Below, piece after piece: positions 7,650 through 53,364 of a stretch of DNA of 64,000 bases. Position 1 is the first letter of the stretch, and each line of letters begins with the position of its first letter. The translations under genes and the position numbers were made by a program. This stretch comes from Vicugna vicugna (lineage: Eukaryota): contig MU058009.1 in the NCBI GenBank assembly GCA_013265495.1, positions 3,489,780-3,553,779 on the forward strand, given 5' to 3'. Under the pieces are notes generated by a model that made no database searches, was not told where the DNA came from, and saw only the letters and a program-made list of their open reading frames with translations.

Positions 7650-9950
7650 GTTCATTCTCATCTCTGTGTAGTATTCTATCCCATAGATACATCATAGTCT
7701 AAACATTGTAGTGTTCATAGATATTTGAGTTATTTCCAGTTTGCATCTAAAATAAATCGGGCTGCTATGAAAACCCTCATGCGTGTATTTTGGGGTATAC
7801 ATGTACACACTTCTATTGGATATTTACCTAGGAGTGGGATTTCTAGGTCATATATTCACCTTCAGGAAATACTGCAGAAGAGCTGTTATACCAGTTACAC
7901 TCCCACGAGTGGCGTCTGCCAGCTCATTTCTCTGTCTCATCAACAACACTTGGTATTATTGGTCTTCTCAACGCAAGAGCCATGAGGTGATATTTTAGCA
8001 TCTTGGTATTCAGGTTTCTCTGATGGCTAGATAAATTTCTTATGTGATTATTGCCACTTAGATATCATATTTTGTGAAATTTCTCTTCAAATCTTTTGCT
8101 TATTTTTAACTGAGGGTTTGTTGTTTTTCTTACTGATTTAAAGTTATTATTTATGTATTCTATATGTGAGTCCATTCTTGTTTCAATTACATATATTGCA
8201 AATATCCTCTTCTGCTCTATGGCTTAAGTTTTTACTTTCTTAGATGTGGAAACTGAGATTCTTAATTTTAACAAAGCCCACTTCATCAATCTTTTTCTCT
8301 TCATTAGTATCATTTATGTCTCTGCCTAATCAAGGTAATGTGGATAGTGTTCTTTTTATCTTCTAGAATCTTTGTTTTTATTTTAATCAGAGACTGAAAT
8401 ACATCTGAAATTTGCTTTTGAATATGGTGTGACCTAGGGAGTAAAAATTCATTTTTTCCCACATTGATATTAAATTTATTCAATGTCATTTATTGGAAAG
8501 GTTATCCTTTCTTCACACCACCACAGTACTACTTTTTGTAAACCAAATGGAAGTATGAAGACTTCTTTCTGGGTTCTCTAAAGTTCCTGCACAATATCAC
8601 ACTTTCTTAATTAGCATAGTTTAAAGCTCTGTAATGAGTCATTGTGTCCAGTAATTCAAGTCCCCCAACTTCTTGCTTTTTTCGGATGGCCTTGGTTATT
8701 TTCACTCTGTCACATTTTGATAATCAATTGGTCAATTTCCCTCCCCAAAATACTGCTGGGATCTTGATTTGGATCGCCTGGAATCTATGCATCAATTAGA
8801 AATGAATTAGCATATTCACAATATTGAGTCATTGAATCACCGATCTATAAACATGGCAAATTTCTTCATTTATTTAGAATTTCTTTAATTTCCTTTAATA
8901 ATGATTTGTAGTTTTCTGTGTATAAATGCACATTTTTGCTAAATTATTCCTCAGTGTTTGATGTTATACAAAGTTGTAAATGATATGTTTTGTATTTTAA
9001 TAATCTCATTGTTTGTTGATGGTACACAGAAATATGATTGATTTTTGTATAATTAACCTTATGTCCAATGACCTAGCTAAATCTGCGTGTTAATTGTAGC
9101 AGTTGTTTCTCCATAGATTATTTAACGTTTTCTAGGCTCACCATCATGCCATCTGTGAATAATAAAGGTTTTATTTTTTTATTTCCAATCACGATAGCCC
9201 CCTTTTTCTTGCCTTATTGCACAGGCTATGACCGCCATTATAATGTTGAACAAAAGTGATGATAGTGCTTGTCCTTGTCGTGTCCTTGGTCCCAAATAAA
9301 AGTCTTCAAAATTTCATTAAATGTTATTGCCATAGTTTTATTGTTGATGATTTTTATCAAATTAAGAAATCTCCCTATGATTTCTGTTTTGATAAGGTTT
9401 TTAAAATTTTTTATATCACACATGGTTGTTGAATGTCATCAACTTTCTGCATCAGATGTTCCACATCTAATGAAATGATAATAGATATTTTTCATTCAGC
9501 TTACATATGTGCTGAATTATATTGATTATTTTATTTTGAATTTTTGAAACTGATTGTTAAAAAGGTGGCTTTACTTTTCATTTTTTTTAATAATGTTTTT
9601 GTCACATTTGGGTAGAAAGTTATGTTGGCCTCATGAAGCTAGTTAGATCCAATCTGCTGTGAAATTCATCTATTGGACTTATAATTTCAGGACTTTGTTT
9701 TTCTGGTTCAAGACTTTCTGTTTGGTATGTTTATATAGGTTGCATTTTCTGGCGAAATTCTCTATCCTGTCACCATTTCCTTGAACGTATTAATTATTTA
9801 AAGTTCATTTCTGAAAACCCAAGTCAGTATCATCTGTGACTACTTCCTCCTGTTTCTGTTCCTGTTGGTTTGTCTTCTAATGTGTCTGGTAATATATGTT
9901 TTTAACTCTAGACCTTGAGTATGAAGAATTGAGGCTCTGAATGATGCCAC
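7650..9950 (-). mobile_element. Old L1 (L1M-type) 3' UTR and ORF2 remnant, right part
   Basis: T-rich reverse L1 sequence. ORF 9238..9423(-) 'EIIGRFLNLIKIINNKTMAITFNEILKTFIWDQGHDKDKHYHHFCSTL' resembles frameshifted L1 ORF2 RT. Confidence 0.85.
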
Positions 9951-17075: not shown

Positions 17076-18589
17076 TAACAAATAGTCATTAAGTGATTTA
17101 CTAGAAATTTCTAGAGGAAATTTCTCTTTCCTCATGATAGTGGTTCCTCCATCCCTTATGGAAGCAGGCGTCCTTGTGTCCCTGGGAAATGGCCGCCTTT
17201 TAACATGTTGAGCAGGTGCTGAATGATCTCAGTCCTCAGCCAGGGTCCCTGGAGCTCTGTATTAACCTTTTCCCAGGATGGTTATTGACAATTTACCCTT
17301 AGTCTTTGCTTCCTGCCTCTTAACTGGTTTTGTATTTGCCAGGAGGCGGTGCTTCTAGCCCAAGGCTTCAAATGAACTCATCCCCCTCTTTGTCCGAATC
17401 TTGGTCTCTTGTTACATTGAGTGAAAATGACCCAAACTGGGGTTTCCCTGAGCCTGGAAGAGAGCAGGGGATGGGAGGTGGCAAAATGTCAAAAGATCAA
17501 TCAGAAAAAGAGAGAACTGCCCCCCCGACCAAGGCCTCCTCTGTCCTGTGTGCAGCTCCCATTTCACTCCCAGTAAGACAGCTCACAAACTGGGGAGAAA
17601 AGGAAGAAGTTGATCAAGTGCCTTTTGGGTTTGGGGCATGATCCTGTCCATCTGAAAAAAAATGTATTTAACATGTGAAGGCTATCACCTGGAGACTCAG
17701 TCTGGGACCGCTTCACTTCGTCAGAAATATAATCCGGAAGGGAGCTGCCACAGTGGCAAACTGCAGTTTCAATTAGAACTGCGGGAGGGCTGGACCACAG
17801 GGAAGAGGGTTTTAAGCCTTGGTGGTCACAGGGGAGGCTGTGCAGACCCTTCTTGGCTGTGAAACAGGACAGAATTTCAGGCGATGTTGCTGCTGGCTGT
17901 CTCAGCATCTCTCAGCTCATCCTTCTTCCCAGCCTCAGTGCCTTCTTCCCTCCTCGCCTCCTGGCCCGAAAAGGCAACGCACCAGCAATCCCAGACCTGT
18001 GGCCAGGTGGGCTCTCAGAAGCCTTTGAGGGACGGATGGGCTTCGAATGGGCCTGCAGCCCTAAGGCGCCCACCAAGCTGTAGCCTCCTGCACCCAGACC
18101 AGTCTGGAGGGTGGGATGCGCTGGTCCTCTTGCAGCTGCTGTTCATCTCCAGACCGTGAATTCTCTAACTGGGCTTTGCACCTGCTCTTTCTTACCAGCT
18201 CCTCCAGCAAAGACTCAGAGTGGACCTCAGGTCCTCGGCATGGACACGGAGTAGGTCCTGCTGCAGGTGGGCGGCCCCCCTGGGAAAGCCCAGCAGCCCC
18301 GGGCCCAGCCGCTGCCCTGGCGCCAACCGGAGCCCTACGGGGACCTGCTCCGGCCTGCCGACCTCCAGGGCCCGTCCCAGAATCGCATCAGCTTCCTCCT
18401 CTCGGCTTCCACTCTGTCACTCTCCTCCCCAAGACCCCCAGAATGGAAGACTGAGTGCGCTTTGGGGCCAGCCCTCCTGGCCTGTGAGTAATGACATTTT
18501 TCTGTAGGAACTTTCAGATCCATCCAGATCCAAGCTGGACCACCAAACCCCGGGGGGACTCAGCTGTGGCCTCGTGCCAGGAGTTGGAA

Positions 18590-19269: not shown

Positions 19270-19420
19270 AGAGAAGCCCAGTTAGGAAGCCCTTTGAGCA
19301 GGGATCAGTTTCTTAAACTCTTTATACCTCAGTTTCCTCATCTGGAAAATGAGCTTGTAATACTTATCCCGCAGAGCTGCAGTGGAGTTAGATACATGTC
19401 TCTAAGTCATCTAGTACATC
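19270..19420 (+). mobile_element. MIR SINE fragment
   Basis: 'tttcttaaactctttatacctcagtttcctcatctggaaaatgag...gagttagatacatg'. Confidence 0.75.
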
Positions 19421-19959
19421 TCCTGGCCCTTCTCAGCATTACTACTCCTACGTCCCTGGCCCTGGCTGCCTCTACCAACGACCTGGGACACTGTCACTGT
19501 GATATTCTCCTAGCTGGTCCCTGTTTCTGATCTCTCTGCACCCCTTGCCCCTGCCTCCACTAACCCCAGGGCAGCCAGAATGGTCTTTGAAGAACTGAGC
19601 TGCCCCTAGGACAGCTCCTGGTGGACAGAGTGGAGAAGGTGGACTGGTCAGTGAGAGCTGAGCTCCCGCTGCACACAGGACACCTCTGGGGGACGCCCTC
19701 CCAGCCTCTGTTCAGGTCTGGCCGCGGCAGGGGTCCAGGGCAGTGACCGACCACCTTCCCTCTGCCCACAGATCTGCAGGGAAGCCCATTCTTGTCCGTT
19801 CTTACTCGTTCTTACTGCACATGACTCAGAGAGCCACTTTAAAGCAAAGGATGAGACTTGCATGTAGGCATTAGACACAGAAACAGTCTCCCTGAGCAGG
19901 AAGCCACGCGGCGCATAATTGCTGTAGGTATCTAAGGGGTCAGGCCTCTGCTACCCAGC

Positions 19960-20200
19960 GAGGCTGGAAACCAGCTTTTTCATCATAAAGGAATGAGCTG
20001 CCAATGATTTTCATAGCTTGATTAACGCTCTTCAAACCCATCTCCATTGGGTGCAGAAGCGAAGCCTGGGGAAGATGGATGTTTCCTATTACTTGATGTA
20101 ATGACTGTGAGGCGGGCTAATGAAACCTTTACAGCCCGAGTTTACAGAGAAAAAACCAACACACACAGATCAATACCTGAGTTACAGTTCGAATGCACTG
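19960..20200 (+). mobile_element. Penelope-like element (PLE) reverse transcriptase fossil fragment
   Basis: Three collinear translated blocks: 19976- FFIIKE*AANDFHSLINAL; 20071- EDGCFLLLDVMTVRRANETFTARVYR; 20153-20194 KPTHTDQYLSYSSN. They match the PLE RT C-terminal motif 'F.i.....F..hlNs....I.Ft.E.E.dg.lpFLDv.v.r..dg.l.t.vYRKpThTd.Yl.f.S.Hp'. Confidence 0.8.
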
Positions 20201-22114
20201 ATAAATGGATGACAGGCTGCGGGCCTGGCCTCCGCACGGGGAAGGTGGGCCGGGGAGAGGGCGGGGGCGTGCTGGGAGGGAGCTGTCGATGCAAGAAGAT
20301 GAAGAAAGGTCCATGGTTGGACTGGTGGGGCCCCAGGGTGCCGAGAAGAGGTGATCTGAGCATGTGGGGGTCCAGGAGAATGGAGGGACCAGACACCCAG
20401 GAGGTGAGAGCCGGCTTCCGTCGTGAAGGCATTGCGCCCAGAAGTGAGGGATGCTGGTGCCCTGTGGCCGACGGCAAACGGCTTTGGTGGTGCACTCATG
20501 ATGAGGCTGGGCAGCCCTCTGCCCTCACTGTCCTTTCTGCTAATTAAAACCTCACCCCACGGTTTCCATTCCCAGTGCTCGTTAAGATTTTCTTGCGGTG
20601 ACGCAGGCATCCTTTGGTTTCCCGTGTCCTGGGTTCAGATCCCCGACAAGGAGGGACGGCATCTGCGCTCAGCTCGGCCTCTGTCCCGCTGCCGCTCAGA
20701 AGCCCCCTGGGGTCAGGTGACACCGCCTGCTGGCTGGGACAGCCAAGAAAGTCTAGCTTCTGGCACATCACCCATTCATCTTCTCAGACAGTGTTCCTTG
20801 CACAACTGTGGCCCAAGAGGGAATGTACACGGGAAAAATTCATAGCTTTGGCAGAAAACCCCTCACCTCCTCCAAGTCCGGAGTCTTCGCTGACATTCAG
20901 GAGGCTGCTGTGCCCCCTCCACCCCGCCACCCGAGCGCCGACTCCCCAGCCCACTCTTGTTTGCGTTTCTTGGCTTGTCCCAGCTCTGATGCAGGAAAGG
21001 AATTTTTGTGTGTTTTCTCATTGTGTGTCTCCGGCTCTTCAAGCCCCATCCGGTACGCAGCAGGAGCTCAGAGGATGCCCGTCCAAGGAGGAAATGAACG
21101 AGGATTGGCCCCACAGGGAGCCAGCTCACAGCCACTGCCCTGCATCTCAGTTTTCTGACCTGGAAAATGGGGATGATAATCCCTACTTTATCTTTCAGGT
21201 GGACTCACATACGTACAGTGAAAAATATGAAACACTACATTTAATCGGGCCACACGTTTTCCTTGCTGGTCGCCCTAAACACCGTGGAAGGCGTTCCAGC
21301 AAACAGGCCACCTCGAAGCTGAAACGGTTTCCCACCCTGTGGCTGAAATGGCTGCCTGCTCCAAACCCCTGATGCATGATGATGCCCTCCATGTCTTTAT
21401 CCAGAGTTATTTTGGGGGTTCAGCGCCCCGAGAAATGAGAACCGCAGACCAGGGCTGCGGGGTGTGCGCTCACCAGATGGCAACTGGACAGAAGGCGCCA
21501 TGTATAGCATCTGAGGGCGGGGCCTTCGGGACCTGTGCTTTAAATATAGGGGTGACGTTGCTCCTCTGGGGAGCACACTTCCTTCAGTTCTGCTGACCCA
21601 GTGGGACAGGTGAGCAGCAGCAGCAGGGAGAGTTTTGATAATCGCAGTTTGCTCAGGTGGGGAAGTGGGGCCAGCACCGAGGCAAGCAGGTGTCTCACCA
21701 GGGCTGGCGGCGGGACTGGGACTGGCGGTGAGAAGACCAGGGGCTTCCTCCCCTGATTCCCCTTCCTGCTGGGCCGTCCTCTTTATGGAAAGTCAACTGG
21801 TCCGAGGCTAATTACCCAGCCTGCTCTCCCAGTGTTAGCACCTCTTGTAAACAGCTTCCCACCCTTGGGCCTTTAGAGGACGCATGGCTGAAAAGCTGGC
21901 TGTGCCCTGCCGGGGTGTCTTCCGTTAGAGCCTCTGAGTGTCACGCTTCCCTCTGCACCCCCGCGATGTTGGGTGTGGACGCACACAGGTGCCTGCAGCA
22001 GAGAAACCCAACCCTCGCCGGGGCCCCTTCCTTCCCCTGGAAGCAGCAGAGGATGGGGCAGGGAAGGGGCGGAGGGCGTGAGTTTAGGGACCGGATGGAG
22101 ATGGACTCCCTGCT

Positions 22115-52998: not shown

Positions 52999-53364
52999 NN
53001 NNNNNNNNNNNNNNNNNNNNNNNNNNNNNNNNNNNNNNNNNNNNNNNNNNNNNNNNNNNNNNNNNNNNNNNNNNNNNNNNNNNNNNNNNNNNNNNNNNNN
53101 NNNNNNNNNNNNNNNNNNNNNNNNNNNNNNNNNNNNNNNNNNNNNNNNNNNNNNNNNNNNNNNNNNNNNNNNNNNNNNNNNNNNNNNNNNNNNNNNNNNN
53201 NNNNNNNNNNNNNNNNNNNNNNNNNNNNNNNNNNNNNNNNNNNNNNNNNNNNNNNNNNNNNNNNNNNNNNNNNNNNNNNNNNNNNNNNNNNNNNNNNNNN
53301 NNNNNNNNNNNNNNNNNNNNNNNNNNNNNNNNNNNNNNNNNNNNNNNNNNNNNNNNNNNNNNNN
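52999..53364. other. Assembly gap (366 N)
   Basis: Continuous run of N. Confidence 1.

What the first reader, a model, noticed from the sequence alone, without database searches (positions are those of the whole stretch)
19960..20200. Fossil Penelope-like retroelement RT in a mammalian (camelid) genome
Seen in sequence: three collinear blocks translate as FFIIKE*AANDFHSLINAL (from 19976), EDGCFLLLDVMTVRRANETFTARVYR (20071-20148) and KPTHTDQYLSYSSN (20153-20194). Blocks 1 and 3 share one frame and block 2 is shifted, so there are two offsetting frameshifts. Established knowledge: the order 'F..h(I/L)N...E.dg.lpFLDv...r......t.vYRKpThTd.Yl...S.Hp' is the C-terminal RT region of Penelope-like elements. 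These are active in fish, amphibians and reptiles but survive in mammals only as rare, very old relics (a Penelope1_Vert family is catalogued in repeat libraries). Inference: the catalytic YVDD expected just upstream (after 'tgg aaa', W-K, near 19965) appears deleted. Amino-acid similarity this clear in an element presumed to predate mammals suggests slow evolution or exaptation, for example as an enhancer. It could instead be an uncatalogued PLE family.
Basis: partly seen in the sequence, partly recalled or inferred. Interest (0 to 1): 0.78.

Follow-up and report, generated by a model that had tools for sequence, protein, structure and literature searches.

The report
Conserved Penelope retroelement fossil in mammals
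A 230-base dead fragment of a Penelope-like retroelement's reverse-transcriptase gene sits here and has been kept almost unchanged in at least five distantly related placental mammals as non-coding DNA, which is a real but already described kind of ancient "protein fossil".

Summary
A frameshift-tolerant alignment of a Penelope-like element (PLE) profile against all 64 kb picks out 19976-20206 (+) at 50.7 bits. The shuffle null is 22.8±2.4. With the KPTHTD motif left out, the peptides just before and just after it are each the top-scoring of about 128,000 six-frame positions.

The matched region is the PLE-specific stretch after the RT core. No RT core, YVDD or GIY-YIG survives beside it.

Orthologous contigs from four other, unidentified placental mammals share the same stop codon and the same frame breaks. 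In the relic 12% of columns vary, against 41-60% in the flanks (Fisher p=2e-35). Substitutions show no codon periodicity. There is no RNA-structure signal. So the constraint is on non-coding DNA, and exaptation is supported, most likely as a cis-regulatory element, though that role is untested.

The "W-K" TGG and the H of KPTHTD are found only in this genome.

Frith 2022 already reports 56 such Penelope fossils in human, so this is a new member of a known kind. The scan had no other Penelope note in this genome.

The parts
19976..20066 (+). Relic block 1. It corresponds to the PLE segment between the YVDD motif and the FLD motif (profile columns 56 to about 82) and carries an in-frame TGA at 19994-19996.
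   Evidence: frameshift-tolerant alignment. The TGA is shared by all five species, and 19970-20029 is 98-100% identical across them.
20071..20148 (+). Relic block 2. It is in a different frame and corresponds to the E-x-G...(F)LD...R...VYR segment just before the PLE signature motif.
   Evidence: It ranks 1 of 127,852 in the anchored PSSM test. The frame break against block 1 is shared by all species.
20149..20152 (+). A four-base spacer between VYR and KPTHTD, that is, one extra codon plus a one-base frameshift in an A-run.
   Evidence: Read directly. The same spacing is seen in L121, L123 and L125; L124 has three more bases.
20153..20206 (+). Relic block 3. It holds the PLE signature K-P-T-H-T-D followed by x-Y-L-x-x-S-S. 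Homology to the profile ends here (column 129 of 169), before the HHP motif.
   Evidence: The H codon CAC is AAC in all other species.
19910..20240 (.). Conserved non-coding block. It is 86-100% identical to four other mammals, inside flanks at about 55-78%. It coincides with the relic and extends about 60 nt further upstream.
   Evidence: Variable columns are 16% here (12% in the PLE core) against 41-60% in the flanks. Gap columns are 1% against 12-22%. It is the only stretch at 88% or more in the 2.9 kb compared.
20199..20215 (+). TGATAAATGG-N-TGACAG at the 3' edge of the conserved block. It resembles a PBX-HOX site next to a MEIS/PREP site. This is a lead only.
   Evidence: one match in the window against 0.02 expected, but I defined the pattern after seeing the sequence. 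Both halves are kept in all five species. The factor assignments come from general knowledge and were not tested.

Best explanation
This is the last recognisable piece, about 230 bp at 19976-20206, of a Penelope-like retroelement. It comes from the part of the ORF just after the catalytic YVDD motif and running into the start of the thumb. The element was already dead in the common ancestor of the five placental lineages compared: it had one stop and two frame breaks, and no RT core or GIY-YIG nuclease remained beside it. Since then a block of about 330 bp around it (19910-20240) has been held by purifying selection acting on the DNA, not on any protein or RNA fold.

The most likely mechanism is that the fragment was exapted as a cis-regulatory module, an enhancer-type cluster of transcription-factor sites, for a nearby gene.

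Shown here: PLE origin, shared disabling lesions, orthology, and strong localised constraint without codon periodicity or RNA structure.

Inferred: the regulatory role, and an age older than placental mammals.
For: PLE origin:
- The degenerate pattern for YRKPTHTD pulled 120 metagenome stretches. Their ORFs carry RVT_1 ending 20-40 aa before the motif and, in L096 and L043, GIY-YIG after it.
- A profile of this region finds 55,969 proteins at E<=1e-3. The long ones have RVT_1, and P0003 also has GIY-YIG.
- The window matches at 50.7 bits against a null of 22.8±2.4. The anchored flank tests both rank 1 of about 128,000. The X-read-through scores 46.8 bits.

Orthology and constraint:
- Ten ORF clusters from other assemblies are 76-86% identical over the relic and diverge right after it.
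- Four fetched loci align collinearly over 1.2-2.7 kb at 71-75%.
- Identity is 86-100% in 19910-20240 against 55-78% in the flanks.
- Variable columns are 12-16% against 41-60%, and gap columns 1% against 12-22%; Fisher p=2e-35 and 3e-23.
- Pairwise distance in the block is about a quarter of that in the flanks.

Non-coding nature:
- The stop and frame breaks are shared.
- Substitutions by codon phase are 20/17/19.
- The out-of-frame reading of block 3 is equally conserved.

Not a structured RNA:
- Rfam finds nothing.
- Folding z-scores are -0.6 and -0.2, and 0 of about 98 predicted pairs are compensatory on either strand.

Literature:
- Frith 2022 (PMC9004415) reports 2 pre-tetrapod and 54 pre-amniote Penelope protein fossils in human. 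Such fossils often have strong phastCons scores and sometimes regulatory evidence.
Against: - No direct evidence of regulatory activity: no chromatin, reporter or binding data could be used.
- No neighbouring gene was identified in the window.
- Several RNA-seq runs hold part of the stretch, which would also fit a role within a transcript.
- The four comparison species are unidentified. Depth beyond placental mammals is not shown.
- The transcription-factor motif reading is post hoc.
- With the motif columns neutralised, the unanchored alignment score is not significant on its own.
Confidence: 0.6

Rival explanations
1. The conserved block works at the RNA level. It would be part of a mature transcript, such as a conserved exon of a long non-coding RNA or an untranslated region, and selection would act on RNA sequence motifs (protein or microRNA binding) rather than on DNA-bound factors.
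For:: RNA run X15 holds a third of the sampled words of 19700-20400. Five further RNA runs from four other studies (bat, gut and whole-organism metatranscriptomes) each hold a few exact 31-mers. That is what the 98-100% identical core would give if it is transcribed in other mammals.
Against: So spliced, unspliced, intronic and DNA carry-over cannot be told apart. There is no Rfam family, no thermodynamic or covariation signal, and no gene or exon was recognised nearby.
Confidence: 0.25
2. It is a neutral relic with no function. It looks conserved only because of a local low mutation rate, or because the comparison species are close relatives.
For: The species behind L121-L125 are unknown. The 5' flank (19745-19909) is itself less diverged than the 3' flank: 0.45 against 0.77 minimum substitutions per site.
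Against: The flanks within 100-300 bp on both sides differ by 25-37% between the same species, while the block differs by 5-9%. The boundaries are sharp. Indels are 12-20 times rarer inside. It is the only such block in 2.9 kb. Mutation-rate variation does not act on a 330-bp scale with such contrast (general knowledge).
Confidence: 0.05
3. It is a domesticated PLE-derived protein-coding exon, in either the PLE frame or the open frame that spans block 2.
For: One frame is open from 20026 to 20544 here, and the corresponding frame is open in all ten ORF clusters.
Against: Those ORFs were found because they are ORFs, which is ascertainment. Their lengths vary from 78 to 165 aa, and identity collapses beyond the relic. 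Substitutions show no third-position excess in any frame: 11/11/10 in that frame. The PLE frame has a shared stop and two shared frame breaks. There is no Pfam match.
Confidence: 0.02
4. The resemblance to PLEs is chance, or the fragment derives from another reverse-transcriptase class such as a LINE or LTR element.
For: Pfam finds nothing in the short pieces. Local hmmsearch with motif-free sub-profiles does not rank the blocks first. A LINE-like AT-rich stretch elsewhere in the window reaches 33 bits with the same profile.
Against: The locus scores 50.7 bits against a null maximum of 28.7. Three independent collinear parts sit in the exact PLE spacing without gaps. All five species give the same alignment at 41.7-51.6 bits. 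The region lies outside the generic RVT_1 domain, in ORFs that carry GIY-YIG. I did not score profiles of other RT classes against it.
Confidence: 0.03

Closest known systems
Ancient Penelope-like 'protein fossils' in mammalian genomes (Frith 2022, Mol Biol Evol, PMC9004415)
   Same: Both are short (about 180-260 bp), frame-broken fragments of PLE ORFs that are detectable only at the protein level with frameshift-aware alignment. Both are conserved across mammals, are interpreted as exapted, and are mostly missed by RepeatMasker.
   Different: I could not check whether this locus is orthologous to one of the 56 human fossils, because the list is not in the held supplements and human sequence is off limits. 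Those fossils are shown to predate amniotes or tetrapods. Here only sharing among placental lineages is shown. Frith describes them as often lying in gene deserts or large introns; here the surrounding DNA has 0.55-0.65 GC and no host gene was identified.
   Same: UCON13 is a PLE-derived member of the 'ultraconserved element' repeat families, that is, an old PLE sequence retained under constraint.
   Different: Membership could not be tested, since no Repbase or Dfam model is available here. 'Penelope1_Vert' occurs in none of the 8.4 million searched papers, so its existence rests on recollection only.
Active Penelope-like elements (RT + GIY-YIG retroelements of fish, amphibians, reptiles and invertebrates)
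   Same: The relic aligns without internal gaps to the segment that lies between RT motif YVDD and the thumb of intact elements. Its best pairwise score is 39 bits.
   Different: It is not an element any more. There is no RT core, no YVDD, no remainder of the thumb, no GIY-YIG and no recognisable termini. It has a stop and two frame breaks shared across species.

Membership tests
Penelope-like element (as the source of the sequence) | Significant, collinear similarity to the PLE-specific ORF segment after the RT core (…FLD…VYRKPTHTD.YL..S…) | tested here: met
   50.7 bits against a null of 22.8±2.4. The anchored flank tests rank 1 of about 128,000 twice. The X-read-through scores 46.8 bits against the profile, with decoys at 6.3 or less. 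The same result holds in four other species.
Penelope-like element (as the source of the sequence) | The segment belongs to ORFs with reverse transcriptase upstream and GIY-YIG endonuclease downstream | tested here: met
   This holds for the reference set, not for the relic. RVT_1 ends 20-40 aa before the motif in 6 of 8 ORFs, and GIY-YIG follows in L096 and L043. RVT_1 is present in 10 of 10 long representatives, and GIY-YIG in P0003.
Penelope-like element (as a functional member) | RT core with catalytic YxDD | tested here: not met
   The alignment starts after the YVDD columns in all five species. With the relic removed, upstream DNA 19400-19959 reaches 11.9 bits against the full-length profile, below the null mean of 16.8.
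Penelope-like element (as a functional member) | GIY-YIG endonuclease domain and the rest of the thumb downstream | tested here: not met
   Homology stops at profile column 129 of 169, before HHP. Downstream DNA 20216-21500 reaches 16.0 bits, which is null level.
Penelope-like element (as a functional member) | Intact open reading frame | tested here: not met
   There is a TGA at 19994-19996 and two frame breaks, shared by all five species.
Exapted TE-derived conserved non-coding element (the class of Frith 2022 and the UCON families) | Orthologous presence in distantly related species with collinear flanks | tested here: met
   L121, L123, L124 and L125 align collinearly over 1.2-2.7 kb. Flank distances are 0.25-0.37 and star-like. 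Ten ORF clusters carry it. The species are unidentified.
Exapted TE-derived conserved non-coding element (the class of Frith 2022 and the UCON families) | Substitution and indel rates well below those of adjacent DNA, without a coding signature | tested here: met
   12-16% against 41-60% variable columns, and 1% against 12-22% gap columns; Fisher p=2e-35. Codon-phase counts are flat.
Exapted TE-derived conserved non-coding element (the class of Frith 2022 and the UCON families) | Insertion predates amniotes (presence at the orthologous site in reptiles, birds or amphibians) | not testable with these tools
   No vertebrate genome alignments are available. The ORF-based search returned only sequences at 76% identity or more, with alignable flanks.
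Exapted TE-derived conserved non-coding element (the class of Frith 2022 and the UCON families) | Demonstrated regulatory or other host function | not testable with these tools
   No chromatin or reporter data are available. The motif at 20199-20215 is only a lead.
Catalogued repeat family (Penelope1_Vert / UCON13) | Nucleotide match to the family consensus or model | not testable with these tools
   No Dfam or Repbase library is available here. The literature search for Penelope1_Vert returned nothing. UCON13 is only named in Kojima 2018.

The most novel reading that the evidence does not exclude
The relic belongs to none of the catalogued families and is not among the 56 human Penelope fossils. 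It is a PLE fragment recruited as a PBX-HOX/MEIS-type developmental enhancer, or as a transcribed regulatory RNA exon, as the RNA-run hits hint. Its orthologues reach back to the amniote or tetrapod ancestor.
Probability: 0.12. Interest if true: 0.5.

Novelty: new member of a known kind. Interest (0 to 1): 0.3.

Why it matters
The result confirms that a reader working from raw sequence can spot a true Paleozoic-type "protein fossil" that standard domain scans miss (Pfam gave nothing). It also shows directly that the fragment is under strong non-coding constraint in placental mammals.

Each such fossil does two things. It documents that Penelope-like elements were once active in the ancestry of mammals, where none is active now. 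It also marks a probable regulatory element built from transposon coding sequence.

The class is already described, with 56 Penelope fossils in human (Frith 2022), so a specialist would not be surprised. The value lies in annotation, and in a candidate enhancer to test.

Tried and rejected
- **Pfam on the three pieces**: no hits, because the pieces are too short. This is uninformative.
- **Local hmmsearch with motif-free sub-profiles on frame-split pieces**: the blocks were not top-ranked (block 2 ranked 35 of 1,529). The cause was low power from local-alignment entry costs and a gappy alignment. The anchored ungapped test replaced it.
- **Viral contig scan for the motif**: nothing.
- **Literature search for Penelope1_Vert** and **for the five run accessions**: nothing.
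- **Supplements of Frith 2022**: no per-locus table is held, so no synteny check against the known human fossils was possible.
Nothing was laid and the single call was used, so the RNA-run lead stays unverified. External queries started at 19400 or lay elsewhere. Only local scripts that used the whole window as background or null read those places.
- **Gene context:** the ten longest ORFs have no Pfam domain.
- **First attempt to list secondary hits of the full-length profile**: it returned tails of the main alignment, which was an artefact of my masking. I redid it on the separated flanks.
- **The 33-bit minus-strand hit**: rejected as a PLE. It is an AT-rich, K/I-rich stretch and probably LINE-derived. 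Pfam is silent on it.
- **Joined read-through in database tools:** the read-through of the relic (X at each break) has no reference, so it was used only inside local scripts and never sent to a database tool. A search of the large protein collections with the joined peptide was therefore left out.
- **Possible human sequence:** the representative ORFs of clusters 3, 5, 9 and 10 are part of protein alignment A2, which was made before their spread was known. These clusters are seen on many contigs, in ENA assemblies or on an NCBI chromosome. I did not fetch their contigs or compare them as DNA, because I could not exclude that one of them is human. Only the rare, Logan-only clusters were fetched.

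Full report
**1. Observation**

- Blocks 1 and 3 share a frame: 19976 and 20153 are 177 nt apart.
- Block 2 (20071-20148) is in another frame.
- Block 1 contains an in-frame TGA at 19994-19996.
- VYR ends at 20148 and KPTHTD starts at 20153. The four bases between them add one codon plus a one-base shift in an A-run.
- The block is less GC-rich (0.44-0.49) than both flanks (0.55-0.65).

**2. Is it really a Penelope-like element (PLE)?**

Pfam finds nothing in pieces this short, so I brought real PLEs into the session.

A degenerate back-translation of Y-R-K-P-T-H-T-D matched 120 metagenome stretches and no viral contig. The ORFs that hold the motif have Pfam RVT_1 ending 20-40 aa before it. 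In L096 and L043 they also have a GIY-YIG nuclease after it. That is the PLE architecture.

tblastn of these ORFs against the window hits almost only 20150-20194, with collinear partners over block 2. That is partly circular, because I had chosen the queries by the motif. I therefore ran four further tests.

- **(a) Local hmmsearch with the motif columns removed** did not rank the blocks first. This test has low power.
- **(b) Anchored, ungapped test.** The spacing in PLEs is fixed here, so an ungapped position matrix anchored on the motif is fair. With the motif excluded, the 24 aa before it are the best 24-mer of all 127,852 six-frame positions of the window. The 8 aa after it are the best of 127,948.
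- **(c) A frameshift-tolerant profile-to-DNA alignment written for this purpose** finds 19967-20194 at 50.0 bits. The shuffle null is 22.2±1.7.
- **(d) An unbiased profile.** To remove my selection bias I searched 1.84 billion representative proteins with the segment profile. This gave 55,969 proteins at E<=1e-3. I rebuilt the profile from 143 of the best 150, of which only 62 have the exact motif. The result is unchanged: 50.7 bits at 19976-20206, null 22.8±2.4, null maximum 28.7. With the motif neutralised, the top site in the window is still this one at 26.9 bits.

Two supporting results:
- Read through with X at its three breaks, in scripts only, the 77-aa relic scores 46.8 bits against the profile. 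It scores up to 39.3 bits against single PLE proteins along its full length. Reversed decoys reach 6.3 bits at most.
- The long representatives all have RVT_1 ending before this region, and P0003 also has GIY-YIG.

The homology is therefore secure.

**3. Extent**

The alignment covers profile columns 56-129 of 169. That is from just after the YVDD motif to just before the HHP motif.

With a full-length PLE profile (733 columns; YVDD at 425, the motif at 487, YIG at 633), the flanks on their own reach only 11.9 bits upstream (19400-19959) and 16.0 bits downstream (20216-21500). The null mean is 16.8. No RT core, catalytic motif, thumb remainder or nuclease is detectable.

The TGG lies in another frame than block 1, no alignment reaches it, and it is TGC in every other species.

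**4. The same locus in other mammals**

The frame spanning block 2 is stop-free from 20026 to 20544. Searching it by reference, scored over the relic part only, returned ten ORF clusters from other assemblies at 76-86% identity. In their alignment everything up to about residue 66 is nearly invariant. That includes the out-of-frame reading of block 3. Identity collapses right after the relic.

No organism names are available. Clusters 3, 5, 9 and 10 are seen on many contigs, in ENA assemblies or on an NCBI chromosome. I could not exclude a human origin for them, so I did not fetch their contigs. I fetched only rare, Logan-only clusters:
- L121 and L122, which are 99.6% alike, so only L121 was used
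- L123
- L124
- L125

They align collinearly with the window over 1.2-2.7 kb at 71-75% overall, so they are orthologous loci. Their flank distances of 0.25-0.37 are star-like. By general knowledge this is the scale of differences between placental orders. The window's species is not an outgroup to the rest.

**5. Constraint**

| Region | Variable columns | Gap columns |
|---|---|---|
| PLE core 19976-20206 | 12% | 1% |
| Block 19910-20240 | 16% | 1% |
| 5' flank 19745-19909 | 41% | 12% |
| 3' flank 20241-20870 | 60% | 22% |

- Identity to the window per 60 nt is 55-78% in the flanks. It rises to 86-100% across 19910-20240, with 98-100% at 19970-20029.
- Fisher p is 2e-35 for variable columns and 3e-23 for gap columns.
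- Pairwise distance in the block is about a quarter of that in the flanks.
- In the 2.9 kb shared with L121 this is the only stretch at 88% or more, against a median of 69%.
- The TGA and both frame breaks are present in all five species. Each species gives the same PLE alignment on its own, columns 56-129 at 41.7-51.6 bits. So the element was already broken, and already reduced to this piece, in their common ancestor.
- Substitutions are spread evenly over codon phases, 20/17/19 overall and 11/11/10 in the open frame. Selection is therefore not on a protein.
- Rfam has no match.
- Folding energies are ordinary (z = -0.6 and -0.2), and no predicted pair shows a compensatory change on either strand.

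The constraint therefore acts on primary DNA (or RNA) sequence.

**6. Two states found only in this genome**

- The histidine codon of KPTHTD is CAC here but AAC in the four loci and in all ten ORF clusters.

The tree is star-like, so both are most simply changes on this genome's own branch. This polarity is an inference, because the species are unidentified.

**7. Mechanism**

The best-supported reading is an exapted, transposon-derived conserved non-coding element. What it does was not tested.

I commit to a cis-regulatory module as the most likely role, at about 0.6 for the full statement. Two reasons:
- This is what such fossils have turned out to be where they have been examined (Frith 2022).
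- The block is dense in invariant short motifs. At its 3' edge all five species keep TGATAAATGG-N-TGACAG, which resembles a PBX-HOX site next to a MEIS/PREP site. It occurs once in the window against 0.02 expected. I defined the pattern after seeing it, so it is a lead only.

The main rival, at about 0.25, is a role within a transcript. One RNA run holds a third of the sampled words. Five RNA runs from four other studies hold a few exact 31-mers each.

**8. Comparison with what is known**

- Frith 2022 (PMC9004415) found 2 pre-tetrapod and 54 further pre-amniote Penelope protein fossils in human. Only one had been seen by RepeatMasker. Many have strong conservation.
- Kojima 2018 (PMC5753468) lists UCON13, a member of the 'ultraconserved element' repeat families, as the Penelope trace in human Repbase entries.

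This locus is the same kind of object. The tools here cannot decide whether it is orthologous to one of those 56 fossils, or whether it matches UCON13 or Penelope1_Vert. The scan holds no other Penelope note. The notes at this window are only this same finding.

**9. Verdict**

- Observation: confirmed.
- Interpretation: supported, except for the YVDD/W-K detail.
- Novelty: a new member of a known kind.
- Interest: modest.

Noticed in passing
window 8068-9535 (- strand): An AT-rich stretch (GC 0.37) whose broken ORFs are rich in K, I and N. By eye they resemble LINE-1 ORF2. The PLE profile gives it spurious scores of 33 and 25.5 bits. Pfam finds nothing in two of its ORFs.
   Followed up: partly
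window 19700-20400, RNA runs X15-X20: One RNA run (reproductive-system sample) holds a third of the sampled 31-mers. Five metatranscriptome runs from bat, gut and whole-organism samples hold a few each. This suggests the invariant core is transcribed, or carried over as DNA, in other mammals.
   Followed up: no
   Followed up: no
window 18200-18500: A GC-rich patch (0.65-0.70) about 1.5 kb upstream of the relic, possibly CpG-island-like. No gene was identified in the window: the ten longest ORFs have no Pfam domain.
   Followed up: partly
window 52999-53364: A run of 366 N (assembly gap or masked stretch).
   Followed up: no
L004, L015, L036, L053 (metagenome contigs Ga0123357_*, Ga0123355_*): These contigs match the degenerate YRKPTHTD pattern 5-8 times each, at spacings of 38 nt and its multiples. 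38 is not a multiple of three, so this is a tandem DNA repeat that happens to fit the pattern, not PLE copies.
   Followed up: no
window 20540-20600 and 20690-20810: Two secondary, weaker conservation bumps downstream of the relic (about 74-84% identity to L121, against about 57-66% around them).
   Followed up: no
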